40,578 nt of DNA. Origin: Macrostomum lignano (Eukaryota). Where the stretch lies: the NCBI GenBank assembly GCA_002269645.1, contig NIVC01004610.1, positions 1 to 40,578 on the forward strand, given 5' to 3'. Positions 15,909 to 39,477 of this stretch are shown piece after piece (position 1 is the first letter of the stretch; the number at the start of each line of letters is the position of its first letter). The notes beneath the pieces were generated by a model, which saw only the letters and a program-made list of their open reading frames with translations, was not told where the DNA came from and ran no database searches. Made by a program: the position numbers and the translations under genes.

Positions 15909-17431
15909 ATAAAACCATAACAGCGGAGTAAAAAGTTTAACAGCTGGCCTCGCTCGTGCAACCGCGAGGCAGCGTCAGCAAAAATTTGAAAATCACCAGG
16001 CACATGAAACGCGCGAATGCTCATTCCAAAACGCAAACACATCAGAGCCACCGTCTGCAGCAGCCGCTGCAACGCAGGACACTTTGAAACGCCTTTGTTG
16101 ATGATGTGACAGGCCGTCTGGTTGTCGCAGTAGATGCTCACCTTGCAACCTTTGAGCACATCCCTCCACCTCATCACTGCCAGCAGAGGGGCCAACCCTT
16201 CCTTGTAGTTGATCGGCAGGTCAGCGGAGACAGATCCTGCATCCTTCTCCCATTCCAGGTAGCACCAGTCAAACAGACCATCCTGGTCACGCAGCAGCGC
16301 CGCACCACCTCTGCCGCACGCATCGGATTCCATCGCCACAACTCGATTGTAGCTCGGCCACAGCTGCACCCATCGGCACGCCTGCAACGCCACCTTCCAC
16401 CAGTTCAGCTGACTGCGTAACCCGGAGTCGACCAGCGTTCGCTGTCCACGCCGTAAGATGTTGCACCGCTCAATCAGCTCACGCAAGAAGGTCCTTCCGC
16501 AACTGATGACCTGCGCTGCCCACCCCAACTTGCCAATGACCTGTTGGAGGGCCAGCTGACTAATCCTCACCTTGGCCGACTCGACACCAAGCAGGTTGAT
16601 CAACTTCCTTGCCTTCTCATCCGGCAGCTTCTTGATTTCTTCCACAGTGTCGAACTCAATTCCAAGGAATGACATCCGCTGCGCCGGCAGCTGGCACTTG
16701 GCCGGATTGACGGTGAATCCCAGCCGAGTCAGCAAGTCAATCAGATCGACGTAGAAGCACTGGCAGTTCTCCTGCGTCCCGCAGTAGGCAAAGTCGTCCA
16801 GGTAAGACTCGGTGTTGATGAAGCCTCTACGCACCATCATCAGATGAATCGCATTGCTCAGGCGTTGGAAGCACGTGACCGAGGCTGCCGCCCCGAACGG
16901 CAGGCGCGTATCAAACATGTAGGTGGGAGTGGCGCAGCCAGGAAATTTGAACTTGAGGCCGGTGTTGACGAAGTCTCCTGGGTGCACTCCACATGCGCGG
17001 TATGCTTCACTCAGGTCAACTTTAGTCATGTAGCAGCCTCTCGTTAACTTCCTTGCGAAGTTTTCAGCGCTTGAAAACCGCAACTTCTTATTGCTCTCCC
17101 AGTGCGCGTTCACCGACAGATTGTCCGGCCGACTGCAATCGTGAATTAGGCGTACCCGACCGTAATCATTCGGCAGGGCACCCAGCGCACTCACAATCCG
17201 AGGCCGCCACCCATCCGAGCACCGACGGTAGCGGTCAAGGCGAATTTCTCTCAGAATTTGCATTTGAACAGCTTCAGCGTACTCGTAAAGATTCACAGAC
17301 TCGTAGTTGCTGACCTCGACAGACTTCAGGTTTTCTCGCTGCACATTCGTAATCCGAAATCCCTCAGACACACCATCAAGAATAAACTGCTTTCTGTACA
17401 GCGGCAGATCAATCGACTCCAACTCTTCCAT
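15785..17431 (-). CDS. Reverse transcriptase + RNase H of the Ngaro element (548 aa; frame is open further upstream)
   Basis: RLIHDCS, KVDLSEAYR, DTRLPFG, YLDD; RNase H SDAC, INYKE, CDN, ADAASR. Confidence 0.93.
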   Translation of the reverse strand: MEELESIDLPLYRKQFILDGVSEGFRITNVQRENLKSVEVSNYESVNLYEYAEAVQMQILREIRLDRYRRCSDGWRPRIVSALGALPNDYGRVRLIHDCSRPDNLSVNAHWESNKKLRFSSAENFARKLTRGCYMTKVDLSEAYRACGVHPGDFVNTGLKFKFPGCATPTYMFDTRLPFGAAASVTCFQRLSNAIHLMMVRRGFINTESYLDDFAYCGTQENCQCFYVDLIDLLTRLGFTVNPAKCQLPAQRMSFLGIEFDTVEEIKKLPDEKARKLINLLGVESAKVRISQLALQQVIGKLGWAAQVISCGRTFLRELIERCNILRRGQRTLVDSGLRSQLNWWKVALQACRWVQLWPSYNRVVAMESDACGRGGAALLRDQDGLFDWCYLEWEKDAGSVSADLPINYKEGLAPLLAVMRWRDVLKGCKVSIYCDNQTACHIINKGVSKCPALQRLLQTVALMCLRFGMSIRAFHVPGDFQIFADAASRLHERGQLLNFLLRCYGFICPSILQSLHQHAFGLATASFLHFQAAQLRQTLLAAAPHRC

Positions 17432-20198: not shown

Positions 20199-22672
20199 AT
20201 GACAACAATCAGTCATCTTGAAGCCGATGCTGAGTCGGAAAAGTTTCTCAGTCAGTTCACCAACATGCACTACGGTGGCCAGAAGACATCGGAGCTCTAC
20301 AGCGACTGGTCTGATGAGTATGAGAAGGTAAGCACACTCAAGACAGCAAATGCCGCTTTTTTTATTACACCTGACCTAATATGAAGGCTGCATATGGCTG
20401 TTCAGTCCAACGACTGGGGGGGGGGGTCGCCAAGCGCACCCTCAATTACCCCCAGTCCCAGCTAATGCTGGTGCCAATTTTACCGCAATGCAGAGCTAAG
20501 TGTCTTGCTAAATGACATAAAATGTTCCGAGTTGTTCGAGAATAAAACCCCCGACTTTTCAATCGTGAGTCCGACTCCCGTCACTTGACTTGTCTGCGAT
20601 ATCAAATTACCAGTGAAAACACCTTGGCACAATTATGAAAGAATTTAGTTCCGTTATAATATCGCAGATATTTCTCTAAATTGTATTCTGGCAAGAACAT
20701 AATTGATAAAATAAATCTATATATTTACTGCAAACAGAATTTTCTGAACATGACCAGCGGATATGAACACCCGGAGCGCATTGCCGACATTGCCGCGTCA
20801 GTGCTGCCCGACAAAACTTGTCGAATTCTCGACGTCTGCGCTGGCACCGGACTTGGCGGAGCTGCGGTAGGAGTTCTTTGACTATATCCTGCTGATAGAA
20901 CTAATATAAGGCATTCCATCTGCAAAGTTTGAATCTCTTGGGCATTTCAGCTACAATAACCCTGAACAGTAAATATTTTATTTGTGTTTCTCTTGTATAT
21001 ATCTTGTAATTAGGCCAAACTTTATGATCCCACGGCTTGAACATATTTTTGCTACATTTGTACGTCAGCCGTTGTGAGCTGAAATAACTGAAGTAAAGAA
21101 GATAACAAAACCGTTGTATTCTTAGGTCCTTTGTGATATCTATCAATTCACCAATTCATCCCGGTTATATTTTTTATTTTAAATTGATCTCAAACTAATC
21201 TCAAACTGATCTCAAACTAATCTCAAACTAATCTCAAACTGATCTCAAACTGATCTCAAACTAATCTCAAACTAATCTCAAACTAATCTCAAACTGATCT
21301 CAAGCTGATCTCAAACTGATCTCAAACTGATCTCAAACTGATCTCAAACTGATCTCAAACTGATCTCAAACTGATCTCAAACTGATCTCAAACTGATCTC
21401 AAACTCATCTCAAACTCATCTCAAACTGATCTCAAACGACCATCGTTAAGCTGAAGAAGCGCGGCTTCGACAATATCGACGCCTTGGACGGCAGTGCGGG
21501 AATGCTGGAAAAAGCCAGACAGAAAGGCATCTACATCTGCATCGTCCAGGAGGTGATTGGTACCGGGCCGCTTACTAAAGTAGAGAAAGGTGAGCCTGTA
21601 GGTTTTTGTTGTTTGTGTCCTCTAAACGCACCATGAAATAACAGAGCAAACCACAGATACTAAAATAACTAGATGGGCCACTCGGGCATAGATACTTATA
21701 AAACAGCTTTCTACTTTTAGTTCAGTAGCAGGAAGTATATATAAGCTATTTTATAAAAATAAAGGCTGTTGAAATGACTTTGATAAGTTTCGAAGCCCAA
21801 GCTTGCAGCCGTAAACAGCCTAGCTGCTAATTGGTTCGGGAATAATGTACATTGGCCAGTCCACTTAAATGTACAGGCCGCTTTAGGCTGGAATCCCGAG
21901 AAAGGCAATAAAAATTGGGGTGGGGCGGGGCGAGGGGGTAGTGTGGAAAGGCGCGGTTGGAGGTTTAAGTGGGGGAGGGGGGTAAGAGCAATAAATGAGC
22001 CTTGGCTTTAAAAATAAAATAAAATAAAATAAAATAAAAATAAGTACATTTAAAATACTTCTGTTTACGAGCGTAACTTGCTACTGAACTGAAAGTAGCT
22101 TACACGCAAATGTGCTGAGTGGCCCATCTGGTTATTCTAGTATCAGTGGAGCAAACCAAGCAGGGGCAGAGAAGATCAGCAGTAAACCATATTTATTTGG
22201 GACTTGTGCACGAAGTTTGATTGGATCGGGGGGACTGTAGTGCGATCTGCACCCATGAAGGCCAATCCCAAGGCACAGGGTGTGTACGTGCCTTACAACC
22301 CTGTGCGTATGGAGTGGGCTTGTTGTAGCCGTTGCGTTAGGGTGCTCACAGCCTTTCTGTGAACTTTTATTTTACCAAGCAGAATCCGAACGAATTTCAG
22401 GTGCCTACGATGCCATAGTGACATCCGGTTCATTTGTTCCGGGTCATCTGGGCCCTGGTCAACTGCGAGTCCTGGCTGGCACGCTCAAACCCAACGGCCT
22501 GTTCTGCATGGCAATGCGAGAGGCCTACCTGGAGACCGACTACCTGCGCGACCTTCAACCCGAGATGGAGCGCATGCAACAGGAGGGAATTTGGAAAATC
22601 GAGCGCTGCGACCGGATGGATAATTATCACAACGGTCTGTCTGGTCGAGTTTTCATCTGCAGGCGTCTCTGA
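20199..22672 (+). CDS. METTL27: Class I SAM-dependent methyltransferase, METTL27/WBSCR27-like, 4 exons
   Basis: join(20199-20327, 20738-20866, 21451-21589, 22401-22672); GT-AG introns, phases 0,0,1 consistent. Motifs YSDWSDEYE, ILDVCAGTGL, IDALDGSAGMLEKAR, YDAIVTSGSFVPGHL, LKPNGLFC. Orthology is by motif recall only. Confidence 0.8.
20384..20590 (-). mobile_element. tRNA-derived CORE-like SINE (degenerate) in methyltransferase intron 1
   Basis: Shares AAGGCTGC.TA.GGCTGTTCAGTCCAA.GACTGGGG...CTAATGCTGG...AGTGTCTTGCT with 32365-32495; the distal part resembles a reverse-complemented tRNA head. Confidence 0.55.
21185..21437 (+). repeat. 11-bp tandem repeat (TGATCTCAAAC / TAATCTCAAAC) x 23
   Basis: Read directly; ends 13 bp before exon 3 of the methyltransferase. 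Confidence 0.92.
21668..22132. mobile_element. MITE-like element with TA TSD in methyltransferase intron 3
   Basis: TIRs ACTAGATGGGCCACTC / GAGTGGCCCATCTGGT flanked by TA on both sides; additional subterminal inverted match (CTACTTTTAGTTCAGTAGCA / TGCTACTGAACTGAAAGTAG). Confidence 0.65.
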
Positions 22673-23376: not shown

Positions 23377-23694
23377 CGTCAGATGAGGGTGCATCAGATG
23401 AGGGTGCGTCAGATGAGGGTGCGTCAGATGAGGGTGCGTCAGATGAGGGTGCGTCAGATGAGGGTGCGTCAGATGAGGGTGCGTCAGATGAGGGTGCGTC
23501 AGATGAGGGTGCGTCAGATGAGGGTGCGTCAGATGAGGGTGCGTCAGATGAGGGTGCGTCAGATGAGGGTGCGTCAGATGAGGGTGCGTCAGATGAGGGT
23601 GCGTCAGATGAGGGTGCGTCAGATGAGGGTGCGTCAGATGAGGGTGCGTCAGATGAGGGTGCGTCAGATGAGGGTGCGTCAGATGAGGGTGCGT
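23377..23694. repeat. 15-bp minisatellite (CGTCAGATGAGGGTG) x 21
   Basis: Read directly; possibly coding (see findings). Confidence 0.95.
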
Positions 23695-24315
23695 TCACGT
23701 ATCGACGAGTTCGCGCGTGGCCGTGCCTATATAGGCCGGTAGAAGTCAGAAACTACTATGGACGCATTTATAGCTTGATTTTGGAGGTGAGGTGGGTGTC
23801 AACCCTCCTCGCCTCTCATTGGCTGGCGCCCCGATCACTAGGTGATCGATACCCGTATCGATATCGGCGCTCGGCGCGCGCGCGCGCCGCAGGCGCCAAG
23901 CGCCGCAGGCGACCCTCCCCAGCCGCAGGCGCACCTACCGATATTAGATCCCAATAAATCAATCAGATCCCAAATCAATCAGATCCCAAATCAATCAGAT
24001 CCCAAGCGCACCCTCGCGAGCCGCAGGCGCCCATGCAGCAGGCGCCCCTCCCCGCCGCACGCGCCCTCCCCCGACATGTATGCCGCAGGCGCCCTCCCCA
24101 CCTCAGGCGCCCCTCCCGATATGTATGCGCACTCTCCCTATATGTACACCGATATGTATGCAGCAGGCGCCCGAGTGTACACTCTCCCGATATGTGTGTA
24201 CACCGATATGTAGTCATCGATACGGGCCTCTTCCCCTCTCTCACCTACATCTCAACTAGCGAAATCGAACCCAGGTCGCGCCCATACTAGGACACTACAC
24301 GGTTGTGGGGTATAG

Positions 24316-24730
24316 GGAGCGAGAAGTTTCAACCCTAACGCTGACGCAGCCCTGTACAATGAGCGTGTACGGGCAGAAAGGGGGGGTGGACAGAGAGACG
24401 GCCACTAGGTTATTATACTGTTGAAGCATAGAGAGCGAGAAGTTTCAACCCTAACGCTGACGCAGCCCTGTACAATGAGCGTGTACGAGCAGAAAGGGGG
24501 GGGTGGACAGAGAGACGGCCACTAGGTTATTATACTGTTGAAGCATAGAGAGCGAGAAGTTTTAACCCTGATGCTGACGCAGCCCTGTACAGTGAGAGTG
24601 TACGGGCAGAGAGGGGTGGGTGGACAGAGAACCAGCCACTAGGTTGTTATACTGTTGAAGCATAGGGAGCGAGAAGTTTTAACCCCGATGCTAACGCAGC
24701 CCTGTACACTGAACGTGTACGGGCAGAGGG
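24316..24730. repeat. ~115-bp tandem subrepeat x ~3.6 in the left arm (mirrored at ~31075-31490)
   Basis: GAGCGAGAAGTTT.AACCC...GCAGCCCTGTACA...CCACTAGGTT.TTATACTGTTGAAGCATAG recurs, diverging inward. Confidence 0.85.
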
Positions 24731-27700
24731 TGGGTGGAAAGAGATGTGAACAACACAGCCTGCTACAGGAGCCGGATAGAGAGGCGCATGCTAGGACAGA
24801 GAGGTAGTGTGAGTCACACACACCCCACAGAGAAAGCCATACAGAGGATAGAGAGCTCCCTCCCCAGTTGCAGGGGACAGAGAGGCAGGCAGGGTATGCA
24901 GGGGCATGCGAACCGTCAAGGGGCCACGCGAGGATAGAGTGGAGGAGCAGAGATGTGTTTGGACAGAGAGCCAGCCACGTGTGCGTAGTGTGAGGGAACA
25001 GAAACATATCGAGCAGGAGGGAGATGGGGAGCAAACGCGCAGGGTAAGGGAGCCACACAGGGCGGTACAGTGAGACACGGGCAGGGGTGGAGCCGTGCGT
25101 GGACAGAGCTGAACGGCACGGTCAGCTGCAGGAATAGGATGATAGAGAGGCGCGGAGGGGGACAGAGAGCAGTGTGCAGGGGTAGGCAGCCACGCAGGCT
25201 GGGGAACAGAGAGGCGCGTGTCAGCCAGTTGCAGCCCGGGACAGAGAAGTATGAAGGGGGGCCTGGGACAGAGTTGCGAGCAAGGCACAGAGAGAGGTAG
25301 GGTCTGGTAGCTATGTATAGACAGGGACCCACGCGAGGGCAGGACAGGGGAGTAGACATGCAAGTTGCATGCAAGGGCAGAGAGGTGTGCGCGGAGGGAG
25401 ACAGAGAGCAGTGTGTAGGGGTAGGTAACAGCAAACTTTAGTAGAGGCGCGCGGGGACGGAGAAACCAGTCTGAGCGTACAGAGACGTTACAGAGAGGTA
25501 CACAAACAGAGAATATTAAAAAGCACATGTGTAGGGACAGAGACGTGAGGGAGAATCCACCAAAACACGCTATGTATTATCAAAAGTTGGTTTTAGTGCC
25601 GCATATTTAATAGTGGGTAGTATAATAGTATGTACATAGTAGGTATAATAGTAGTAATAATAGTAAGCATATTAGCCCAAAAGGTAGGCTAAAACTGCTA
25701 AACAGTGTACACATCCTCATCATCCCACAAGCCCCCTCTCCCGCCAGACTCACTCTTCCAAACCTTCCTGTATTGCTGTATGTAAGGAAAATATAGTGTA
25801 AAAATTCAGATGTTAACCTCTAGACCGCTGAAATCAGGGCACACTAGAGGGGTTTCGAGGGTCTGCAAGCTCTATGTAAGCTGCTCGAGGAGGTTCCAGG
25901 GGTGTCGGGAGGGTTTCCATTATGATTTTGAAAAAAACTGGAGGCTTAAATACAACGTTTTATTCAAAAGCAGGTTATTTTAATGAAATAGCCAACACAA
26001 CCATCGTCGAGAGTAGATTTTTATAAGAAACTAGGTATTACAGCAAAATAAACCTTCAAACCATATAAAATTGAATAAAAAGCAGACATAATAAATGGCA
26101 AGTATTTTAATAGAAAAGTAAGCGAATTAGTCACCCGGGGTGTACATCCGGCAGGGTGGGCGTCCAGCGAGTGTACATCTGACAGGATGGGTGTTCAGCA
26201 AGTGTACATCTGACAGGGTGGGCGTTCAGCAAGTGTACCTTCAGCGTCGAGTAGGTGTACACCCGTCAGTGGGGAACTCCACCCCTCCCACCAATGTCGT
26301 GTGCACGCGGTTAGTGTTGGGGAACCCCGATGCTGACGCAGCCCTGTACACTGAGCAACCAGCCCCCCATGCGAGGGACAGAGAGCAGCCCCTGTAGCAG
26401 GAGGGGTAGTGCGTGGAGAGCCGCCATCCCCCCTGTAGCAGGGGACAGATAACAGGCGGCCCCTGTAGCAGTATGAGGCGGGGTACAGAGAGACACGGGG
26501 TGCTGGGACAGAGAGTGCGTGGAGGCACCCTGCGCCGCCCCGGCATGTCGCAGCACGCGGCGCGGGACAGAGAGGCAGTGTGTAAGTCACCCCGCGGAGG
26601 GACAGAGAGCTGCCCAGGCAGGAGGCGCGGGACAGAGAGGCGGTGAATCACACCCCACGGAGAGAGCCGTACAGCGAGCTTCCCCACCCGAGTCCGGTAA
26701 ATATTACAGAGTATTACGTGCACACGCCAGCCCTGAATACCAAGCCATACTAGTCTACCTGCAGTGCTCCCAGAGGGATCAGGGATGGTCAGGAGTTACA
26801 CACCAAGAATGCATTCATACAAAGAGTACACAACTCGAGCCCAGACACCAAGTCACAGTCTACTTACAGTAGAGATGGTAGATTAATAGCAAGATTATAT
26901 TACAATTAGACCTCCCTAGCACATGAGGAGTGAAATTCAATAATAATTGAATTCAATAATAATACAACATTTAGACGTAGTAATTTAATTACAAAATACC
27001 ACTAACACTGAGCCAACGAATTGTAGGTTACAAAGGAGTTGCCACTCATATGGAAAGCCAGTATAATGCAGGTGTATATTATTAAAACATAGACAAAAAC
27101 GATGCAGACGTATATACACACTATTGATTTTGTACATGTACATTTCGGCATATTACCACACATCGCGGGCACATATTATATATCGGGGGATAGGTTAAAA
27201 TACACACATCGTAGATGTAGAAGCAGACACAATGCAGGAAAATTATGATACGAGTGTACATATTAGTGCGTAAAAGTATCATATTATGACACCCTGTAGC
27301 ACATATTGACATAATGCAGGGGAAAATATTGACAGAAATAGTACACAATTGTAGAGGTAACAACCCGCCAACTAGTAAGGGCATCCAGCACTTGTTCAGG
27401 TTTTTATTATTTCGAGACGAGTGTCATGCCCCCGCAAGAGATCTTATCAGAAATTTGTTGAACTCCACTGCAACTCTCCCCAGAGCCTCCAAATGTGAGT
27501 TTTTAACCCAGGGTCGAGTACAAAGGACCCGCCCACTCTTAACCCCAAGGGGTGATCCTAGCGGAGACCAAGTACAGTGCGGACGGAGAGGGGTAACAGA
27601 AAGCGCTGCATCAGACCGCGGGGCTGCATTCCTCCCCCGAGGTAGGCGCGTCAGCTCCCACTCCTCATTTAACCATCAAGTAAACTAAAGAAGTCAAGCA

Positions 27701-28059
27701 GAAAGCCTTACAATCACCCGCAACCAGCACAAGTAAGAGTACTTTCCACTAGAGAGCCATAGTGCAAGATTCAGTTGAAGAAGCACACCAAATTACACTA
27801 AAGACATATGTATTAAAAAGCATACCGGCACCTCTACAAAAACACAGTATGTACCGATTAAAGTTGCTTTTGGTGCAGTGTATTTAATAAAAAGCAGGTA
27901 CCTAACACAAAAGTAGGCATCAATGCAGTGCACGGGCTAAACTGTATTTACAAACGCAGGGCAACGAACTACACACAATGTAGCGCATAGACATAATTGT
28001 ACGCATAAATGTACGCAATTTCCGGTATATAGGACCAAATGTACGCAAATGTACACAAT

Positions 28060-28205
28060 GTACACACACACACACACACACACACACTCAGGTGTATTCA
28101 CAGCAAGAGCTTCCTGCTGATGGCGCCATCGCCTGCGGCGATCGGTGCTGCAGGATGCGCTGCAGGATGCGCCTGAGTGTGTGTGTGTGTGTGTGTGTGT
28201 GTACA
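28060..28205. repeat. Small hairpin: TGTA(CA)nCTCAGG ... CCTGAG(TG)nTACA at the spacer/right-arm junction
   Basis: Inverted (CA)n/(TG)n arms with matching flanks around an ~80-bp GC-rich loop. Confidence 0.85.
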
Positions 28206-31200
28206 TTACCCCTCTCCGTCCGCACTGTACTTGGTCTCCGCTAGGATCACCCCTTGGGGTTAAGAGTGGGCGGGTCCTTTGTACTCGACCCTGGGTTAAA
28301 AACTCACATTTGGAGGCTCTGGGGAGAGTTGCAGTGGAGTTCAACAAATTTCTGATAAGATCTCTTGCGGGGGCATGACACTCGTCTCGAAATAATAAAA
28401 ACCTGAACAAGTGCTGGATGCCCTTACTAGTTGGCGGGTTGTTACCTCTACAATTGTGTACTATTTCTGTCAATATTTTCCCCTGCATTATGTCAATATG
28501 TGCTACAGGGTGTCATAATATGATACTTTTACGCACTAATATGTACACTCGTATCATAATTTTCCTGCATTGTGTCTGCTTCTACATCTACGATGTGTGT
28601 ATTTTAACCTATCCCCCGATATATAATATGTGCCCGCGATGTGTGGTAATATGCCGAAATGTACATGTACAAAATCAATAGTGTGTATATACGTCTGCAT
28701 CGTTTTTGTCTATGTTTTAATAATATACACCTGCATTATACTGGCTTTCCATATGAGTGGCAACTCCTTTGTAACCTACAATTCGTTGGCTCAGTGTTAG
28801 TGGTATTTTGTAATTAAATTACTACGTCTAAATGTTGTATTATTATTGAATTCAATTATTATTGAATTTCACTCCTCATGTGCTAGGGAGGTCTAATTGT
28901 AATATAATCTTGCTATTAATCTACCATCTCTACTGTAAGTAGACTGTGACTTGGTGTCTGGGCTCGAGTTGTGTACTCTTTGTATGAATGCATTCTTGGT
29001 GTGTAACTCCTGACCATCCCTGATCCCTCTGGGAGCACTGCAGGTAGACTAGTATGGCTTGGTATTCAGGGCTGGCGTGTGCACGTAATACTCTGTAATA
29101 TTTACCGGACTCGGGTGGGGAAGCTCGCTGTACGGCTCTCTCCGTGGGGTGTGATTCACCGCCTCTCTGTCCCGCGCCTCCTGCCTGGGCAGCTCTCTGT
29201 CCCTCCGCGGGGGTGACTTACACACTGCCTCTCTGTCCCGCGCCGCGTGCTGCGACATGCCGGGGCGGCGCAGGGTGCCTCCACGCACTCTCTGTCCCAG
29301 CACCCCGTGTCTCTCTGTACCCCGCCTCATACTGCTACAGGGGGCCGCCTGTTATCTGTCCCCTGCTACAGGGGGGATGGCGGCTCTCCACGCACTACCC
29401 CTCCTGCTACAGGGGCTGCTCTCTGTCCCTCGCATGGGGGGCTGGTTGCTCAGTGTACAGGGCTGCGTCAGCATCGGGGTTCCCCAACACTAACCGCGTG
29501 CACACGACATTGGTGGGAGGGGTGGAGTTCCCCACTGACGGGTGTACACCTACTCGACGCTGAAGGTACACTTGCTGAACGCCCACCCTGTCAGATGTAC
29601 ACTTGCTGAACACCCATCCTGTCAGATGTACACTCGCTGGACGCCCACCCTGCCGGATGTACACCCCGGGTGACTAATTCGCTTACTTTTCTATTAAAAT
29701 ACTTGCCATTTATTATGTCTGCTTTTTATTCAATTTTATATGGTTTGAAGGTTTATTTTGCTGTAATACCTAGTTTCTTATAAAAATCTACTCTCGACGA
29801 TGGTTGTGTTGGCTATTTCATTAAAATAACCTGCTTTTGAATAAAACGTTGTATTTAAGCCTCCAGTTTTTTTCAAAATCATAATGGAAACCCTCCCGAC
29901 ACCCCTGGAACCTCCTCGAGCAGCTTACATAGAGCTTGCAGACCCTCGAAACCCCTCTAGTGTGCCCTGATTTCAGCGGTCTAGAGGTTAACATCTGAAT
30001 TTTTACACTATATTTTCCTTACATACAGCAATACAGGAAGGTTTGGAAGAGTGAGTCTGGCGGGAGAGGGGGCTTGTGGGATGATGAGGATGTGTACACT
30101 GTTTAGCAGTTTTAGCCTACCTTTTGGGCTAATATGCTTACTATTATTACTACTATTATACCTACTATGTACATACTATTATACTACCCACTATTAAATA
30201 TGCGGCACTAAAACCAACTTTTGATAATACATAGCGTGTTTTGGTGGATTCTCCCTCACGTCTCTGTCCCTACACATGTGCTTTTTAATATTCTCTGTTT
30301 GTGTACCTCTCTGTAACGTCTCTGTACGCTCAGACTGGTTTCTCCGTCCCGCGCGCCTCTACTAAAGTTTGCTGTTACCTACCCCTACACACTGCTCTCT
30401 GTCTCCCTCCGCGCACACCTCTCTGCCCTTGCATGCAACTTGCATGTCTACTCCCCTGTCCTGCCCTCGCGTGGGTCCCTGTCTATACATAGCTACCAGA
30501 CCCTACCTCTCTCTGTGCCTTGCTCGCAACTCTGTCCCAGGCCCCCCTTCATACTTCTCTGTCCCGGGCTGCAACTGGCTGACACGCGCCTCTCTGTTCC
30601 CCAGCCTGCGTGGCTGCCTACCCCTGCACACTGCTCTCTGTCCCCCTCCGCGCCTCTCTATCATCCTATTCCTGCAGCTGACCGTGCCGTTCAGCTCTGT
30701 CCACGCACGGCTCCACCCCTGCCCGTGTCTCACTGTACCGCCCTGTGTGGCTCCCTTACCCTGCGCGTTTGCTCCCCATCTCCCTCCTGCTCGATATGTT
30801 TCTGTTCCCTCACACTACGCACACGTGGCTGGCTCTCTGTCCAAACACATCTCTGCTCCTCCACTCTATCCTCGCGTGGCCCCTTGACGGTTCGCATGCC
30901 CCTGCATACCCTGCCTGCCTCTCTGTCCCCTGCAACTGGGGAGGGAGCTCTCTATCCTCTGTATGGCTTTCTCTGTGGGGTGTGTGTGACTCACACTACC
31001 TCTCTGTCCTAGCATGCGCCTCTCTATCCGGCTCCTGTAGCAGGCTGTGTTGTTCACATCTCTTTCCACCCACCCTCTGCCCGTACACGTTCAGTGTACA
31101 GGGCTGCGTTAGCATCGGGGTTAAAACTTCTCGCTCCCTATGCTTCAACAGTATAACAACCTAGTGGCTGGTTCTCTGTCCACCCACCCCTCTCTGCCCG

Positions 31201-32364
31201 TACACTCTCACTGTACAGGGCTGCGTCAGCATCAGGGTTAAAACTTCTCGCTCTCTATGCTTCAACAGTATAATAACCTAGTGGCCGTCTCTCTGTCCAC
31301 CCCCCCCTTTCTGCTCGTACACGCTCATTGTACAGGGCTGCGTCAGCGTTAGGGTTGAAACTTCTCGCTCTCTATGCTTCAACAGTATAATAACCTAGTG
31401 GCCGTCTCTCTGTCCACCCCCCCTTTCTGCCCGTACACGCTCATTGTACAGGGCTGCGTCAGCGTTAGGGTTGAAACTTCTCGCTCCCTATACCCCACAA
31501 CCGTGTAGTGTCCTAGTATGGGCGCGACCTGGGTTCGATTTCGCTAGTTGAGATGTAGGTGAGAGAGGGGAAGAGGCCCGTATCGATGACTACATATCGG
31601 TGTACACACATATCGGGAGAGTGTACACTCGGGGCGCCTGCTGCATACATATCGGTGTACATATAGGGAGAGTGCGCATACATATCGGGAGGGGCGCCTG
31701 AGGTGGGGAGGGCGCCTGCGGCATACATGTCGGGGGAGGGCGCGTGCGGCGGGGAGGGGCGCCTGCTGCATGGGCGCCTGCGGCTCGCGAGGGTGCGCTT
31801 GGGATCTGATTGATTTGGGATCTGATTGATTTGGGATCTGATTGATTTATTGGGATCTAATATCGGTAGGTGCGCCTGCGGCTGGGGAGGGTCGCCTGCG
31901 GCGCTTGGCGCCTGCGGCGCGCGCGCGCGCCGAGCGCCGATATCGATACGGGTATCGATCACCTAGTGATCGGGGCGCCAGCCAATGAGAGGCGAGGAGG
32001 GTTGACACCCACCTCACCTCCAAAATCAAGCTATAAATGCGTCCATAGTAGTTCAGAACAACCGCATAAGTGGTGAACGGGCTGGGTCCTCTAATACAGG
32101 GCCTCGGTCCCAACGCTCTCATCAGCTGGAAAAGACGCCGCCGGATGTCCTTCTCTACGTGAGGCACCAGAGCAACGAGGCAGATGAGCCGCTGGAAGCG
32201 AATGAGCATGGTCTTCTGTACGTCTGCATGTTAGGTTCCTATTGGCACTTACTGAACCTCGACTTTGGCTGAATTGTACATGTAAATAAATAATTGATTA
32301 CACCTGCCCATAGGGCCAGATGTGCAACCGACAGCTCAGCCGCAGCTATTGCGCGGCGCATCTG

Positions 32365-32746: not shown

Positions 32747-34402
32747 TTACAAATTTACGTCCAGACTGTACTTCAGCAGAGCCTGCCAAAGTTTTACCCA
32801 CAGGGAATCGAAAAATGCGCTGTCAAAAGCCGTCAGAAAAATGTAATTGACGATGCCCTCAGAAGCCAGGCTGGGTACTATGGTTGTATATCCGTGACCT
32901 CTCCAAAACCCTGCGATTGGAATGTCTAGCGAGGCTGCTAAAACTCCGGCCACGTAAACATCGTCAATCCAGAAGAACTGCTTGAACAGAGAGCACAGGT
33001 AGATGCTGGCGACGTGCTTGGCGTTGAGAATGTAGCCGAAGCCCTCGCAGTAGGTTGGGTAGAAACTGCCGGGAAACTCGTCGTAGCTTACCAACCATTT
33101 TGACATGTAAGGCAACGGAGATCTCTGCGGCTTGGCGCCTCGGGTGGCGGAGCAGTAGAAACTGGATGGAGCGCCCTGGCTCAAGAAGGTCGCCAAGTGT
33201 GCAACGTCCGTGAACGTGTCGTCGTCGACCTTGACGAGATACTTGGCCGACTGGCAGTGTCGCAGGACCCACTCGTACACAGCCAGGTGCTTGATGCTCA
33301 TGTTCCTGTAGTTCTCGGTGTAGTTCAGCTGCACGATGTCGCCGAACCGGTCGCTCTCCGCATCGATCAGAGCCTCGAGCTGCGCTCCGGTCGCTCCGGA
33401 CTCGTCCGAGTCTCCCGACGCTGGTCGGCCGAGAAAGAAGGCCACCTCGATGCGGTACCGTCCGATGTACCTGAGTGATCCCCACGTTCTGCGGATGGTC
33501 GCTCGACGACCGAGGTTCTTCGCGTTGCTGTGAACCGCCACCAATGCCAGCAGGTCGCCCGCGGTGCACAGGTGATCCGCCATGCGCACAAAGTCGTAGG
33601 TTTGCACGTAACGAAGTGCCGGACTCTGGAGGCCTCCGCACTTGCCGGCTGCGCTCTGCAGCTGCTGCTGGGTGACCGCCGAACCCAGCGACTTGAGTTT
33701 AGTCAGCAGCTTTGAGTACAGGCGCGAGTCGCTCGTTCGCTTAATTCGCTCCATGAGAGTTTGTGGCTCAATCGTTTTGTTTTGCTGCGGTTGTTGAGCT
33801 TCTATTTCTTTTGTTGGATTGACGCCTTCGTGTATTGTAGTTTCTTTGTGATCTTTCTGATCAGTGAATGAACCTTTTTGGAACTTTTTTACGTGTTCAC
33901 GACCGTCACTGCTTCCTTTTTGAGACTTCACTTGGGCAACTGGGCCGTCGAATGGATCTTCAAGGATGAAATGTTTTCTATCAGCCAAAAAGTAACCTAT
34001 GTGTTGGGAATCGGCCCTTGCTTCTTTAAACAAATCTTTTCCCATCTCGCCAGTAGTTTTTAGTGGCGGCTTGGGTTTTAAATTATCAAACCTTTTCGGT
34101 GGCTTGTTATAAGTGGTGCCACTGAGTTCAGGCTTCGGTTCTGCTGAAATGCTCTTTAATGATTTACCTTTGTTTAACGATGGTTCTGTCTCAATGACTG
34201 GAGCGCTGAATTGTTTTCTAGGCCGGCCAAGAAATAACTTGCTTCCAAATGACAGCTGCGCAGACAGGGTCAGGGAAATCATTAACAGAAGAAGTAAGTT
34301 CCAATGTCGAAGGCTTAGCTGGAGCAGTAAAGCTGTCCATCGTTGCAGACGGTTGAGCATAGTGAACCGAGAAATAGCTGACACACTCTTTATAAGCTTC
34401 AT
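32747..34402 (-). CDS. GT31-family beta-1,3-galactosyltransferase (B3GALT/brainiac-like), intronless type II membrane protein; start may be Met at 34360
   Basis: N-terminal hydrophobic anchor; RRATIRRTWG, FFLG, ESDRFGDIVQLNYTENYRNMSIK, YLVKVDDDTF (DxD), YPTYCEGFGYIL, IDDVYVAG. Confidence 0.92.
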   Translation of the reverse strand: MKLIKSVSAISRFTMLNRLQRWTALLLQLSLRHWNLLLLLMISLTLSAQLSFGSKLFLGRPRKQFSAPVIETEPSLNKGKSLKSISAEPKPELSGTTYNKPPKRFDNLKPKPPLKTTGEMGKDLFKEARADSQHIGYFLADRKHFILEDPFDGPVAQVKSQKGSSDGREHVKKFQKGSFTDQKDHKETTIHEGVNPTKEIEAQQPQQNKTIEPQTLMERIKRTSDSRLYSKLLTKLKSLGSAVTQQQLQSAAGKCGGLQSPALRYVQTYDFVRMADHLCTAGDLLALVAVHSNAKNLGRRATIRRTWGSLRYIGRYRIEVAFFLGRPASGDSDESGATGAQLEALIDAESDRFGDIVQLNYTENYRNMSIKHLAVYEWVLRHCQSAKYLVKVDDDTFTDVAHLATFLSQGAPSSFYCSATRGAKPQRSPLPYMSKWLVSYDEFPGSFYPTYCEGFGYILNAKHVASIYLCSLFKQFFWIDDVYVAGVLAASLDIPIAGFWRGHGYTTIVPSLASEGIVNYIFLTAFDSAFFDSLWVKLWQALLKYSLDVNL

Positions 34403-35550
34403 TGGGCTCTACGAATCACTAAAAATCTTTTTCTACGCCTCTTTTTATACATCTTTTCTACCTTATGCTCAGCATTATTGTTTGGTTTAAGGTTCGCATT
34501 GTGAGCAAGAAATTTAGTCTCTGCTGTATATTATTCTCAGACAGAGTTTCTGCACGCCAAGCGCTGGGTTCTATTCACCGTGCAAACCTCTCGAGTTCAC
34601 TGGCTGTTGTCCACTGGTGACATAGTTTGTGTTCTCACTCTCTCAAGAGGCTGCATCTGAAGAGTTTGAAAACCTCAAGAGAGTTTTGGCCTTTATTTGA
34701 TGACAGAAAATGTCTTATCTGTGAGATTATTATTAATTACGGCCTGTGCTTGAAGACAGTCAACTCATGTTTTGCGGAAAATGACTTGATTTACCAGACC
34801 TTTCGGAATAATAGTTTGCGATAGCCGAGACTGAATATCAGCCTTTAAGTGAAGTAAGCAAAAATTGAACTTCTGCTCTTACTTTTACCTGCTTTCACAC
34901 CCGCTGTCACTGTCTATGGCAAAACACCTTCATTTCCACTGACCAAGGAGTTCTATAATTAGCAACCTGGAGTGGAAACAAGTTTTTCAGCTTTACCTCG
35001 AGGCCAGACTAGCATAGACAGAGTCGGACAGAGCCATAGACATTCAGTGCTGGCTCCTTTTCTTTACAATTGGCGTGGCCTCATGAGGTAAAACTCGCTT
35101 TCACTCCAGATTGCTACTTATAGAACTCCTTGATTCCACCGACTGACTTCATTTCACACTCGCTGTCACTGTCTATGGCAAAACACTTTCATTTCCACTG
35201 ACCAGGGAGTTCTATAATTAGCAACCTGGAGTGGAAACTAGTTTTTCAGCTTTACCTGGAGGCCAGGGGGTCTTTCTTGAAAGCTACTTACGATCGGCCA
35301 TAGACATAAGTTTCGATAGTCGCACCTACGGTTTGCTCAAAAGAGTCGCAGGTTGACTTAGCGTAAGAGCGGTCGCAACTTTGCGATCTCATAATTTTCC
35401 GCGACAGGCTGTTTCTCGAAACGATCGTATGTCTATGGTCTTTCGTAAGGTGGATCGTAAATCTACGACTGCTCGAAACCGTCGTAAGAAGCATTTTAAT
35501 AGCTACTGAAGGGACGCTATACACAAAGATAGCCAGTGACAGCAAAGATC

Positions 35551-35775
35551 ATGGCGACCAAACGTCAACCTAACTTCTTGCCATGAGAAGAAAAAGTTGT
35601 TGAACGACGTGAACAAGTACTTAGATGTTATAAATTCCAAGGACCAAAAGATCGAAATGCAAAGAAAGAAAAAGGCATGTTGGGAGACCATTACAGCTCA
35701 TGTCAACGCCATTGGTGCGAATATGCAGATGGGAGAAGAATGTCGGAAGAAGTGGTTTCTGTTCAAAAAAACATA
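35551..35775 (+). pseudogene. Harbinger Myb/SANT-like DNA-binding protein, disrupted N-terminal fragment
   Basis: MATKRQPNF / LLNDVNKYLDVI...KKKACWETITAHVNA...EECRKKW; early stop at codon 12. Confidence 0.75.
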
Positions 35776-36273
35776 CTCATTGTTGGTTGGCCTCTTGATA
35801 GCGACATGTGTGCAGTCGATAGCACCAGTGACATGTGGCAGTCCGGCGATCAAATGGAACCCGGCCATGGTCTGATTAATTTCAACGTGGCTCCCAAGAA
35901 AACGTTCAAAATTGTTGAGATGGCTGGCTAGAGCATTAGAGAAAACACCGACAGCACGAGAGGCCGACGCGATGCTAGCGTCCAATGTGTCCCCCATGAC
36001 TCTAAGAAAGGCTCCACTTGCAAAGAACCGCAGTGCAATGCAAACCATAATGATGGGAGTCATGGCGTTGCTCCTTCTTGTCGGTCGTTGACATGAGTCT
36101 CGTACAAGTGTCACAATGTCCAAAATGATGACACGAGGAAATCGATAGCGGTCAATTAGTTCGGAATCGCACATATACAACGGATCAGCATAATCCCGAA
36201 GTCGACGATCACGACCCACTGCACGTTCAGCAGCTCTCATCCGGAGTAGCGCAATCGCAAGCATGAAATCCAT
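35698..36273 (-). pseudogene. Harbinger (HARBI1-like, DDE_Tnp_4) transposase, N-terminal fragment
   Basis: LIDRYRF, IALRFFASG, GLPHVTGAIDCTHV (first catalytic Asp); truncated before the rest of the DDE triad. Confidence 0.88.
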
Positions 36274-36530
36274 TTTCTCAGCTTCTTGAATACACGTATA
36301 TGCTTCTATATAACGTTACTACGCGGCACATATCGTCGGAAACGATACCACCATTGACCATAGACAAGTATTTTTTGCTTCCTGTCAACTTGCGACCTGC
36401 GTAAGTTGCGAGAACTCTAAGTTAGCTTCGAGAAACAGCTATACGACCAATCTTACGGTGAGCGCAAAGTTCTGACTTACGACTACACTTACATAGAACT
36501 TACAATAGTTTCGAGAAAGACCCTCGGAGA

Positions 36531-38319
36531 CCCTATGGTAAGTGCAGGCGTAAGTCCGAACTTTGCGCTTGGCGTAAGACCAGTTGTAAAGCTGTTTCTC
36601 GAAGCTAACCTAGGGTTCTCGCAACTTACGCAGTTCGCAAGTTATCGAGAAGCGAAAAAATGTTGTCTATGGCCGAAGTGGGCAACGATTCCAATGGTTT
36701 TTGTCTGCTTCGGTATATATTCTTTTTGTAAGTATATTTTCGGCATATATGATGCAATGGTCCGTAAGAAACATAAAGCAAAAGTGTCTTCAGGAAGGCA
36801 AACATATATTTAGTAGCTCGTACAAAATAGCAAATAATCAAGATAATAGCAAATAACAGTTTAATCAATTAGCTTCAACCAAGGCTCATCGAATTTTTTA
36901 CTACAATCACTTGAAAAACACCACAACCCTCTCATCGATAATCTCCACCTTGTCGACAGAACGTTTTTTCTCAGCACGTGGTACAGCATCCTGACCTGTC
37001 GATCCAAGAGGTTCAAACGCGAACGTCAATCTGTTGAGAGCTGGAGACAACCATGCAGAGACAAAACAGTTCTAGGGATAGTGCCATCACTGAGGAGTCT
37101 CAGCCATAAGTCGAGCCTGGGAACTGGATGCCTTTATATGTCGTCCAGATTTCATTGTAAATCTTCAGCCGTCAGTATTATTATCAAGTGGTCTCGTAGG
37201 TGTGTCATCGTTATTGACTCTTTTCGCATCTTGAGCTGGCTCCATATCCATAAATAATTGGTCGAACGACAAATCGATTTCGTCAAGACCGACGTACAGC
37301 ACGAGTTGAAAAGTGGTTAAAGCCTGCTCCAGCTAGTCAGCTTGTATGTGTCTTAAGTAATTTTCCAATACTGTATACATTTGTATATGGCATTTGAAAT
37401 TTTGGTAAGCGTCCTGCTCATTGAAATCCATGCAGTTTGGCGTAGGTGAAGTTTACATCAAGGACAACTTGATAACTCAGGACCGGAAACGAGCCAATTC
37501 AAAGCGAAAAAAGTATGAGGCTCGTTTAAAAGCATTGTTCTATGGCCCATCCGTATGCGCATGCTTTCAGTTGCCAATGCATACTCGTAAGTTGTCCTTG
37601 GTTTACATACTATAATAGCATTATAATGCAATGTCTATGGCCAGAAAGTCCTCGGCCGCATTCAATGGTCCTCGGACTTTCTGACCACAGAATGGGCATT
37701 ATAAAGTTATTATCTTATACATATTGGTGCTTAAAATTAATTTCAAAGTTAATTAAATGGACTTCATAGCTCGTACTCGCTACTGTCCTACTGCGTCTGC
37801 ATGTTGCTGACCGCGCATTGGTCGAGATCGTACCCTTCGGGACCACGCTGGTCCTTGCATTATGCGCGATTCTGATCTGATCTGATAGCTCCCAAACTGC
37901 TTTCTTTTCCATTGCATCTCGACTTTTTGGTCTTTAGAATCTGATAGTATCGAGGTACTTGTTTACGTAATTCAACAACTCTTCCTTTTCTCCAGGCGAG
38001 AAGTTGGGTTGGCACTTGGTCGCCATGGTCTTTGCTGCTGTCACTTGCAGTATTAAAGATATCGTACCCTGAGATCTCTTCGATAAGTGCTTCTCACGAC
38101 TGATACCGAGCAGTCGTAGGGTTAAGATTAACCTTACGAAAGACCATAGACATACCAACGTTTCGAGAAACAGTCTTTTGCGCACAAAGTTACGAGCTCG
38201 CAAAGTTGCGATCGATCATAAGTCGTTTCAAGTTGCGAGACTTTCGAGCAAGCCAAGAGCACTTCCTCCCCAACTTACGTCTATGGTCCGATCGTAAGTT
38301 GCTTTCGAGAAAGACCCCC
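36531..38319. mobile_element. PIF/Harbinger element B, diverged relative of A in inverted orientation
   Basis: ~37900-38319 is a diverged reverse complement of 35267-35690, including MATKCQPNFSPGEKEELLNYVNKYLD (ATG 38026); 36535-36680 is an inverted match of 36355-36500. Confidence 0.72.
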
Positions 38320-39477
38320 CAGACTAGCATAGACAGAGTCAGACAGAGCCATAGACATTAAGTGCTGGCTCCTTTTCTGTACAATTGGCGTGGCCTCATG
38401 AGGTAAAACTCGCTTCCACTCCAGATTGCTACTTATAGAACTCCTTGCCACCGACTGACTTCATTTCACACCCCATCACTGTCTATGGCAAAACACCTTT
38501 ATTTTTACCTATTTTACACCCGCCGTTACTGTCTACTACACAAACGGCTAGGCTTAAATCGGTACCTTTAAGTACCTTTTCTGCTTCCTTTTTGGTTCTT
38601 ATTGTGTCCCATTTGGTGCCAATTTAGCCCAGTACGTAGAGTTCGCATTTACCATAGGCTAACAACTGAAATCGCCTGGAAATTCAGCTTTTTCGGTATC
38701 AAATTCGGGTTATTTCGTAGACATAAAACTCCTAAAACACCAGTCACGTATGCATTTGGTATCCTCTCTCTGTTTACCAGACTGATTCTATAACGTATAG
38801 TCCTCTTTGCACCATTATTTACTTTAGGCCTCCTTTACTTGAAGTAGTGTTCGCAGTTAAAACCAAATTGATTTCTGTTGTCTGTGGCTTTCTCTGGTTT
38901 GCTGACGTAAAATCTCTTCTAGGACGCTATAACGTCGAACTGCTGGGAGCCGCCCGATTTGAATGAATAAAAAACAAAAAGAACACGAAAGGTATACTGT
39001 CGGTGCATGCTAATGAGTTTAAGGCACAGACATTGGCATTTGGAAATCTCGCACATTCGTAGAGTAAAGATTAAAAAAAAATGCCAACTTCGCAGCTCTC
39101 AGTTGAAGCATGCAATTATGCAGCTTCCCACGCATTTACCTTTTGACCATATAGACAGTGTATAGTTTGGTTTATAATTAGTGTATTTAAAATGCCAACT
39201 ATAATAAAAATGCTTTGTACAAATACATGTATGTTCCGGCTGAAGTATATTGTACATCTTTATTACAGCACTCTCTAGCCTGCCATAATGGCATTTAGCT
39301 TGCCTAATTAGCATTTCATATTGAATCTGATTGCTTAGCCATATTGGGATTTTTTCAAATGAAATTTTGTAAAAATTGCGAATGAAAAATTTAATTTGAA
39401 GTTTTATAATGAAGTTTAGTCTGGCATCCAACCATCTAGGAAGTAGGGGTAGGGGCGCGCACCAGACAGGGCGCTCA

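What the first reader, a model, noticed from the sequence alone, without database searches (positions are those of the whole stretch)
23746..32058. 8.3-kb integrated palindrome: 3.85-kb inverted arms, 6-bp TSD, ACTACT...AGTAGT termini, no genes
Seen: arms 23752-27596 and 28206-32052 are reverse complements. The only differences I located are four 1-bp indels in G/C runs (~24170, ~25455, ~26460, ~26590); the comparison was not exhaustive. Unique flanks share the direct repeat TCAGAA. Known: a 6-bp TSD, long TIRs and trinucleotide-repeat termini are hallmarks of Polinton/Maverick elements, but as I recall their ends are AGT..ACT; here the polarity is ACT..AGT. The only alternative parse (4-bp CAGA TSD, AAC..GTT ends) also fits no superfamily I know. 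The arms are much longer than usual TIRs. Inference: a non-autonomous member of an undescribed large-TIR integrase family, or a snap-back defective genome of a protein-primed virus-like element.
Basis: partly seen in the sequence, partly recalled or inferred. Interest (0 to 1): 0.85.

Follow-up and report, generated by a model that had tools for sequence, protein, structure and literature searches.

The report
Gene-less foldback transposon insertion in flatworm
The 8.3-kb palindrome is a real, recent insertion of a gene-less "foldback"-type mobile DNA element in the flatworm Macrostomum lignano; this is a known kind of element, and only the enzyme family that moved it remains open.

Summary
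The arms 23752-27596 and 28206-32052 are reverse complements with no substitutions. They differ only by four 1-base indels, all in C/G runs. The element is flanked by TCAGAA/TCAGAA.

The window is a whole PacBio contig of Macrostomum lignano (Mlig_3_7). A second copy of the locus on another contig matches both flanks over more than 6 kb. At the insertion point it carries one TCAGCA and no element. So the insertion is real, with a 4-6 bp target duplication.

The element has no detectable gene. There is no Pfam, Rfam or tRNA hit, and no protein homologue. Its arms are built from tandem arrays and strand-specific short motifs. A 609-bp non-coding middle ends in a strong 151-nt hairpin that abuts the right arm.

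This is the anatomy of foldback-type non-autonomous DNA transposons. A published Galileo copy is 9,021 bp long with 4.2-4.7-kb inverted repeats and no transposase. The palindrome most likely arose by a hairpin-associated template switch and was moved in trans.

The Maverick/Polinton reading rests only on a 6-bp duplication and doubled-trinucleotide ends. No Maverick gene or relative was found. A genome-wide census of copies was not possible with these tools. Interest is modest.

The parts
23746..23751 (.). Left copy of the target-site duplication, TCAGAA
   Evidence: The homeologous empty site carries a single TCAGCA.
23752..27596 (+). Left arm (3,845 bp), starting ACTACTATGG
   Evidence: 0 substitutions and 4 homopolymer indels against the right arm.
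23752..23945 (+). Terminal unique domain of the arm. It is GC-rich, with short internal palindromes and a (CG)n run.
23946..24182 (+). Subterminal short tandem arrays (16 bp x3.1-3.5, 46 bp x2.1, 33 bp x2). They overlap most of the six same-strand GCAGGCGC copies, which lie at 23889-24163; two of the six start in the terminal unique domain.
24312..24744 (+). 117-bp tandem repeat, 3.7 copies, 92% matches
24745..25560 (+). Purine-rich block studded with GACAGAGAG-type motifs. The arm holds 25 copies, all on one strand and none on the other.
26140..26238 (+). 31-bp tandem repeat, 3.2 copies
27597..28056 (+). Unique 460-bp segment, present once and only next to the left arm. Non-coding.
28057..28207 (+). 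Hairpin module: a 41-nt stem containing (AC)13/(GT)13, 95% complementary, with a 69-nt loop. Its 3' end overlaps the first 2 nt of the right arm.
   Evidence: I21.: -68 kcal/mol as single-stranded DNA, z = -10.6.
28206..32052 (-). Right arm (3,847 bp), the reverse complement of the left arm, ending CCATAGTAGT
32053..32058 (.). Right copy of the target-site duplication, TCAGAA

Best explanation
This is a young insertion of a non-autonomous, foldback-type DNA transposon in the Macrostomum lignano genome.

The element carries no gene. It offers two identical ends, plus arrays of same-strand subterminal motifs, to a transposase or integrase made elsewhere. That enzyme cut the target with a 6-nt stagger (4-6 nt allowing for the parse ambiguity) and joined the element in. 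Repair of the gaps produced the TCAGAA duplication. These steps are inferred from the anatomy. What is shown is the insertion, the duplication and the absence of coding capacity.

The palindrome most likely arose in one step from one end of a parent element. A polymerase copied the arm, the 460-bp unique segment and a pre-existing 151-nt hairpin. It then switched template at a 2-nt AA/TT microhomology at the base of that hairpin. Finally it copied the arm back out to the terminus, giving a second, perfect end. This origin is inferred.

The superfamily of the mobilising enzyme is unresolved. A cut-and-paste DDE enzyme of an unclassified family is the default. A Maverick-type integrase is the main alternative.
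For: Insertion is shown:
- Both flanks align collinearly over more than 6 kb, at about 89-98% identity, to contig NIVC01001957.1.
- There the flanks abut on a single TCAGCA with no element.
- Both duplicated copies in the window read TCAGAA, so they were copied from each other.
- A separate small inverted-repeat element 1.6 kb away shows the same present/absent pattern. This validates the comparison.

It is a single element, not two nested ones. The terminal 23-mer occurs only at the two outer ends.

No coding capacity or RNA gene was found.

The architecture is foldback-type:
- A terminal unique domain.
- Tandem arrays of 16, 46, 33, 117 and 31 bp.
- 25 same-strand GACAGAGAG motifs and six same-strand GCAGGCGC motifs.
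- A non-coding middle.
- This matches published descriptions of Tetris and of long-repeat Galileo copies.

Evidence for a template switch:
- The right half equals the left half minus the 460-bp segment. The junction shows a 2-nt microhomology and lies exactly at the base of a hairpin that folds at -68 kcal/mol, z = -10.6.
- The hairpin stems differ at two CpG/TpG sites while the arms differ at none. The hairpin therefore predates the palindrome.
Against: - No second copy, parent element or transposase was found. The tools cannot scan the M. lignano assembly, so family status rests on a single insertion.
- A 6-bp duplication with ACT/AGT ends fits none of the cut-and-paste superfamilies whose features I could check in the papers read (P 7-8 bp, Mutator-type foldbacks 8-10 bp, IS3EU TA..TA ends).
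- Arm identity could be kept up by gene conversion, so 'young' is not proven by the arms alone.
- The internal layout comes from one PacBio assembly and was not checked against reads.
Confidence: 0.6

Rival explanations
1. It is a Maverick/Polinton-derived defective genome. One end of a protein-primed, virus-like element was duplicated in inverted orientation by strand switching during displacement replication ('snap-back'). This gave a gene-less palindrome with two replication and integration ends, which a Maverick integrase supplied in trans then inserted.
For: - A 6-bp duplication is the Polinton length.
- Each end is a trinucleotide repeated exactly twice and starting with A. That is the format of vertebrate Maverick end motifs, which themselves vary: (AGT)2, (AG)3, (AC)3A.
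- The other superfamilies with 6-bp duplications that I could check have TA..TA or TG..CA ends, which are not met here.
- The template-switch anatomy suits strand-displacement replication as well.
Against: - The end motif is (ACT)2//(AGT)2, which is not one of the published forms.
- No trace of polymerase, integrase, ATPase, protease or capsid genes was found in 4.45 kb of unique sequence. Mavericks are gene-dense and their inverted repeats span 46-1,447 bp.
- The arms are made of minisatellite-like arrays, which is typical of foldback elements.
- No paper held here links Mavericks or Polintons to Macrostomum.
- A doubled trinucleotide has a chance of about 1 in 64.
- The duplication may be 4 or 5 bp rather than 6.
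Confidence: 0.22
2. The insertion is real, but the long palindrome inside it is an assembly error of the PacBio contig. For example, a simpler element with shorter inverted repeats may have been folded back by chimeric reads.
For: - The assembly is PacBio-based, fragmented and about 1.5 times the measured genome size.
- The only arm differences are homopolymer indels, the typical residual error of such data.
- No reads could be inspected.
Against: - Both outer junctions are exact and end on the same base of the same sequence, next to a proven target duplication. The two ends are therefore truly inverted copies.
- The centre is not a plain fold-back, as missed-adapter chimeras produce. It is asymmetric, with a 460-bp segment present on one side only and a hairpin with a 69-nt loop.
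- At 8.3 kb, the element is within the reach of single long reads.
Confidence: 0.08
3. It is not a mobile element. It is a local fold-back inverted duplication formed by break repair at this site.
For: Hairpin-associated template switching with microhomology is also the signature of repair-driven inverted duplications (one search lists such work).
Against: - None of the 8.3 kb is present at the homeologous site or elsewhere in the 70 kb of M. lignano DNA held here. The material therefore came from elsewhere.
- It is bounded by a clean short direct duplication of the target, with the empty site otherwise intact. This is what transposition leaves and what local duplication does not.
Confidence: 0.05

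Closest known systems
Long-repeat, transposase-less copies of Galileo (P superfamily, Drosophila), e.g. D. willistoni copy 112 (PMC4168063)
   Same: - Nearly the same size and layout: 9,021 bp against 8,301 bp (23752-32052).
- Inverted repeats of 4.2-4.7 kb against 3.85 kb.
- Tandem repeats inside the repeats, no transposase gene, and identical target duplications.
- Origin ascribed to abortive repair, slippage or template switching.
   Different: - Galileo makes 7-8 bp duplications with a GTANTAC preference. Here the duplication is 6 bp (4-6), TCAGAA.
- There is no sequence similarity.
- The host is a flatworm, not a fly.
- The arms here are identical, whereas Galileo copy 112 has arms of unequal length.
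- No autonomous partner is known here.
Foldback elements proper (Drosophila FB, Tetris; mostly Mutator-related) (PMC4079207)
   Same: - Long inverted repeats built from a terminal domain, a block of tandem repeats and an inner domain.
- A non-coding middle domain.
- Few structurally complete copies, and the mobilising transposase often unknown.
   Different: - These elements make duplications of 8-10 bp.
- Their repeats reach 1.7 kb in Tetris, against 3.85 kb here.
- The ends are unrelated.
Polinton/Maverick virus-like elements (PMC8097293, PMC5499653)
   Same: - A 6-bp target duplication.
- Inverted ends that begin with a short unit repeated in tandem, here a trinucleotide repeated twice.
   Different: - By definition these elements encode a protein-primed polymerase and a retroviral-type integrase. 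This element encodes nothing.
- Published ends are (AGT)2//(ACT)2, (AG)3//(CT)3 or (AC)3A//T(GT)3. Here they are (ACT)2//(AGT)2.
- Their repeats span 46-1,447 bp, against 3,845 bp here.
- Their total size is 12.7-24.6 kb, against 8.3 kb here.
IS3EU / GingerRoot DNA transposons (PMC10045372)
   Same: Usually a 6-bp target duplication.
   Different: Their ends are TA..TA, occasionally TG..CA. The ends here are AC..GT. No transposase is present to compare.
Snap-back or inverted-terminal defective genomes of protein-primed linear replicons such as adenoviruses (my own knowledge, not checked with the tools)
   Same: One genome end is duplicated in inverted orientation, which gives two functional termini and loses the genes.
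   Different: Those are extrachromosomal replication by-products. Here the palindrome is integrated with a target duplication, and no link to any such replicon has been shown.

Membership tests
Foldback-type non-autonomous DNA transposon (a structural class) | Inverted repeats make up most of the element | tested here: met
   Arms of 3,845 and 3,847 bp make up 93% of the 8,301 bp.
Foldback-type non-autonomous DNA transposon (a structural class) | Tandem or short dispersed repeats inside the inverted repeats | tested here: met
   Arrays of 16, 46, 33, 117 and 31 bp. 25 same-strand GACAGAGAG and 6 same-strand GCAGGCGC motifs.
Foldback-type non-autonomous DNA transposon (a structural class) | Middle domain without coding capacity, and no transposase | tested here: met
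   No Pfam hit in the 20 longest stop-free segments, apart from one DUF6299 match far below its cutoff. No homologues.
Foldback-type non-autonomous DNA transposon (a structural class) | Inserted by transposition: target-site duplication and an empty site | tested here: met
   TCAGAA on both sides. The homeologous locus has one TCAGCA and no element.
Foldback-type non-autonomous DNA transposon (a structural class) | Member of a repeated family sharing ends with an autonomous partner | not testable with these tools
   The M. lignano assembly cannot be scanned. There are no matches in the window, in the two homeolog loci, or in the JGI metagenomes. The three IMG/VR matches are chance matches.
Polinton/Maverick | [quoted passage not shown] | tested here: not met
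   No such domains or any ORF homology. A non-autonomous derivative could lack them, so this result lowers membership but does not exclude mobilisation by a Maverick.
Polinton/Maverick | 6-bp target-site duplication | tested here: inconclusive
   A 6-bp direct repeat is present. One extra complementary base at each end allows 4- or 5-bp parses, and the empty site fits all of them.
Polinton/Maverick | End motif 5'-(AGT)2//(ACT)2-3', (AG)3//(CT)3 or (AC)3A//T(GT)3 | tested here: not met
   The ends are 5'-(ACT)2//(AGT)2-3'. Only the format, a doubled short unit starting with A, is shared.
Polinton/Maverick | Shares termini with gene-bearing Mavericks of the same genome | not testable with these tools
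   No Maverick protein seed was obtainable from the tools. TE proteins of M. lignano are absent from the protein collection.
IS3EU / GingerRoot | TA..TA (or TG..CA) termini with a 6-bp duplication | tested here: not met
   The termini are AC..GT.
P superfamily (Galileo) and Mutator-type foldbacks | Duplications of 7-8 bp (P/Galileo) or 8-10 bp (FB, Tetris) | tested here: not met
   The direct repeat cannot be extended beyond 6 bp.

The most novel reading that the evidence does not exclude
The element is a gene-less, snap-back derivative of a flatworm Maverick-like (protein-primed) element with a previously unrecorded (ACT)2//(AGT)2 end motif. This would show that defective palindromic genomes of such elements are integrated into the germline by an integrase supplied in trans.
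Probability: 0.2. Interest if true: 0.6.

Novelty: new member of a known kind. Interest (0 to 1): 0.3.

Why it matters
If the main reading is right, this is one more foldback-type element, and the first I can point to in Macrostomum. It is of local value in three ways:
- It marks a transposition system that was active after the subgenomes of this neopolyploid diverged.
- It is a clean example of how a multi-kb palindrome can be made in one hairpin-associated template switch.
- It is an 8.3-kb near-perfect palindrome that could be a fragile or rearrangement-prone site between two convergent genes.

It would matter more if copies with genes turn out to be Maverick-like. That would extend the range of Maverick end motifs and hosts, and would document integration of a defective, snap-back genome.

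Tried and rejected
1. Coding remnants. Pfam on the 20 longest stop-free segments gave nothing credible: the only match was DUF6299, at E 0.16 and far below its cutoff.

2. RNA genes. There are no Rfam families or tRNAs in the window.

3. Other copies by protein search. The 261-aa arm ORF had no hit among 5.8 billion proteins. The 149-aa terminal ORF had no hit among 1.84 billion representatives.

4. Other copies by DNA search.
- The terminal 23-mer and a 29-mer from the terminal domain are absent from JGI metagenomes.
- The 18-mer gave three IMG/VR matches that do not extend beyond the 18 bases. That number is about what chance predicts, so they were rejected.
- No part of the element matches the rest of the window or the homeolog loci.

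5. Sampling the M. lignano genome through its TE proteins.
- The window's 1,038-aa retrotransposon ORF is not on record.
- The search with the 548-aa reverse transcriptase ORF (15785-17431) returned no M. lignano protein. This route is closed.

6. Getting a Maverick protein seed from paper supplements. None is held as text for PMC10748475, and Kapitonov & Jurka 2006 is not held.

7. Literature on Mavericks or Polintons in Macrostomum or flatworms. Nothing relevant was found.

8. Nested or head-to-head pair of two full elements. Rejected, because there are no internal termini.

9. Simple hairpin-primed snap-back at the (AC)n/(GT)n hairpin. Rejected as the sole event. It would have copied the 460-bp segment into the right half, and that segment is missing there.

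10. IS3EU ends obtained by shifting the boundaries inwards. Rejected, because the AC/GT bases left over are absent from the empty site.
Full report
Where the window comes from. An exact look-up of the 551-aa galactosyltransferase encoded at 32747-34402(-) shows that the window is the whole 40,578-bp contig NIVC01004610.1 of assembly GCA_002269645.1. The closest relatives of that protein are all from Macrostomum lignano. Two papers identify the accession as the PacBio-based Mlig_3_7 assembly of this free-living flatworm. Its genome holds three diverged subgenome copies and is rich in simple repeats and transposons. The rest of the window fits that picture. It holds an intact non-LTR retrotransposon ORF, a reverse transcriptase/RNase H ORF, ankyrin and Mab-21-like fragments and many minisatellites.

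The observation. The repeat finder recovers the palindrome as four perfect blocks separated by single-base shifts. A global alignment of the left arm against the reverse complement of the right arm shows no substitution in about 3,846 aligned bases.

The ends are ACTACTATGG... and ...CCATAGTAGT. TCAGAA lies directly outside both. One further base is complementary on each side (A 23751, T 32053). On sequence alone the duplication can be read as 6, 5 or 4 bp.

The terminal 23-mer occurs only at the two outer ends, even with three mismatches allowed. The structure is therefore one element, not two nested ones.

The insertion is real. Two paralogues of the galactosyltransferase lie on contig NIVC01001957.1. 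Local BLAST shows that this contig also carries a copy of the whole neighbourhood. The left flank of the window aligns at 89-98% identity and the right flank at 92% over 3.2 kb. The two alignments are collinear and overlap by a few bases.

At the junction the other contig reads ...GGCCGGTAGAAG TCAGCA CAACCGCATAAG.... It has one copy of the hexamer and no element. Both copies in the window read TCAGAA, as expected if one was copied from the other at insertion.

The same comparison exposes a second, unrelated presence/absence difference 1.6 kb to the left. This is a ~500-bp element with 33-nt inverted ends and a ~9-bp duplication. That shows the comparison behaves as expected for transposon insertions.

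The empty site cannot resolve the 4/5/6-bp ambiguity, because all parses predict the same empty sequence. The site lies between two convergently oriented genes, about 0.7 kb beyond the 3' end of the galactosyltransferase gene.

Could it be an assembly artefact? The boundaries cannot be, given the duplication and the empty site. Both ends terminate on the same base of the same sequence, so the two termini are true inverted copies. The centre is also unlike the plain fold-back made by missed-adapter PacBio reads. It is asymmetric, with a 460-bp segment present only on the left and a hairpin with its own 69-nt loop. The four homopolymer differences are what imperfect polishing of two indistinguishable arms would leave. 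I could not inspect reads, so I keep a small probability that the inner layout is wrong.

What is inside. No gene was found:
- The 20 longest stop-free segments of one arm plus the spacer have no credible Pfam match at E<=1. The single hit, DUF6299, is at E 0.16 and far below its cutoff.
- There is no Rfam family or tRNA.
- The longest arm ORF (261 aa) has no homologue among 5.8 billion proteins.
- The 149-aa ORF of the terminal region has none among 1.84 billion cluster representatives.
- The public annotation places no gene in the right arm.

Each arm is modular. From the end inwards it contains:
- a 194-bp GC-rich terminal domain;
- short arrays of 16, 46 and 33 bp, overlapping most of six same-strand copies of GCAGGCGC, which run from 23889 to 24163 and so begin in the terminal domain;
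- 3.7 copies of a 117-bp repeat;
- an 0.8-kb purine-rich block;
- AT-rich stretches and a 31-bp array.

The motif GACAGAGAG (at most one mismatch) occurs 25 times in one arm, always on the same strand. It occurs eight times in the remaining 32 kb of the window.

The middle consists of a unique 460-bp segment (27597-28056) followed by a 151-nt module (28057-28207). In that module, 41-nt stems containing (AC)13 and (GT)13 pair around a 69-nt loop. As single-stranded DNA the module folds at -68 kcal/mol, 10.6 standard deviations below shuffled controls.

How the palindrome was probably made. Read from its outer end, the right half is the left half with the 460-bp segment missing. The arm runs straight into the hairpin stem, and the junction shares two bases (AA/TT) with the end of the left arm.

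The two hairpin stems differ at two CpG/TpG positions, while the 3.8-kb arms differ at none. The hairpin is therefore older than the palindrome and belonged to the parent sequence.

The simplest account is a single template switch. A polymerase copying one end of a parent element left its template at, or landed at, the base of the hairpin. It then copied the arm back to the terminus, creating a second identical end. Because of the symmetry I cannot tell which half is the original.

Simple hairpin-primed snap-back does not fit by itself, since it would have duplicated the 460-bp segment.

This kind of event is invoked for defective copies produced during gap repair after excision of cut-and-paste transposons. 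From general knowledge, it also occurs during strand-displacement replication of protein-primed linear genomes. It therefore does not identify the family.

How it most likely works. The element cannot move by itself. It has two identical ends and dense same-strand subterminal motifs, which in foldback elements such as Galileo are secondary transposase-binding sites. An enzyme encoded elsewhere must have recognised the ends and joined them to staggered cuts 6 nt apart (4-6 nt). Shown here are the insertion, the duplication, the lack of genes and the modular arms. Inferred are the binding role of the motifs, mobilisation in trans and the template switch.

Comparison with known elements. The layout is that of foldback-type transposons: long inverted repeats made of a terminal domain, tandem repeats and an inner domain, around a non-coding middle.

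The size of the arms has a direct precedent. Galileo copy 112 of Drosophila willistoni is 9,021 bp long. It has inverted repeats of 4,246 and 4,680 bp, internal tandem repeats, no transposase and identical duplications.

[quoted passage not shown] It is thus a structural class, not a superfamily.

The duplication lengths of the lineages known to produce foldbacks do not fit: 7-8 bp for P/Galileo and 8-10 bp for FB/Tetris.

Among superfamilies with 6-bp duplications, IS3EU/GingerRoot have TA..TA or TG..CA ends. Ginger and LTR-type elements have TG-type ends. None of these is met.

Polinton/Maverick remains as the only described superfamily compatible with a 6-bp duplication. Its vertebrate members carry end motifs made of a short unit repeated in tandem: (AGT)2//(ACT)2, (AG)3//(CT)3 or (AC)3A//T(GT)3. 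The present ends, (ACT)2//(AGT)2, share that format but not the sequence.

Several points count against membership:
- Polintons by definition encode a protein-primed polymerase and an integrase.
- They are gene-dense, and their inverted repeats span 46-1,447 bp.
- Here 4.45 kb of unique sequence shows no gene remnant and looks like minisatellite DNA.
- I found no paper linking Mavericks to Macrostomum.

What could not be done. A census of other copies is the decisive test, and it is out of reach. The available collections do not include the M. lignano assembly as searchable DNA. Its transposon proteins are not in the protein collection. The metagenome and viral scans were empty or gave chance matches.

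Verdict. This is a real, gene-less, long-armed mobile-element insertion, but its architecture is a known one. The link to Maverick-like or other integrase families rests on the duplication length and a doubled trinucleotide alone.

My probabilities are:
- about 0.6 for a foldback-type non-autonomous transposon of unresolved, probably cut-and-paste, family;
- about 0.2 for a Maverick-mobilised snap-back derivative;
- under 0.1 each for an assembly error of the inner layout and for a non-mobile local rearrangement.

Interest is modest (0.3). Novelty is rated as a new member of a known kind.

Noticed in passing
window 21651-22149: A small (~500 bp) element with 33-nt inverted ends (91% complementary) and a duplication of about 9 bp (GAGCAAACC). 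It is present in the window but absent from the homeologous locus, so it is a second, independent insertion difference.
   Followed up: partly
window 2852-5968 (-): An uninterrupted 1,038-aa ORF of a non-LTR retrotransposon with endonuclease and reverse transcriptase domains. This exact protein is not on record in the public gene collection.
   Followed up: partly
window 14852-17431 (-): A 548-aa reverse transcriptase/RNase H ORF, followed by a 216-aa ORF with no Pfam hit. By eye the second ORF carries a tyrosine-recombinase-like HSLRRGGAT motif, which suggests a DIRS-like retroelement. Its nearest protein relatives are in marine metagenomes and cnidarians, at 62% identity or less.
   Followed up: partly
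window 34944-38447: Another inverted-repeat element of about 3.5 kb, with several blocks of subterminal inverted repeats (43-81 nt, 73-94% complementary). It contains a 191-aa ORF (35698-36273, -) with no Pfam hit.
   Followed up: no
window 6313-6853, 13097-14143, 21181-21437, 23377-23694, 39464-39710: Many long minisatellites: 15 bp x36, 21 bp x50, 11 bp x23, 15 bp x21 and 20 bp x12.6. The 15-bp array at 23377-23694 lies 57 bp from the insertion. It is also present, in shorter form, at the homeologous locus, so it is not part of the element.
   Followed up: partly
L002/L003 (contig NIVC01001957.1, 47910-72248): The homeologous contig carries three galactosyltransferase (GT31) paralogues of 552, 516 and 432 aa within 20 kb. 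The window carries one complete copy. A methyltransferase-like gene lies on the other side of the empty site.
   Followed up: no
window 31975-32040 (mirrored at 23764-23829): Each terminus carries, reading outward, a CCAAT-like box (GCCAGCCAATGAG) about 70 bp from the end and TATAAA about 15-20 bp from the end. The layout resembles a promoter pointing out of the element. This was seen by eye only and not tested.
   Followed up: no
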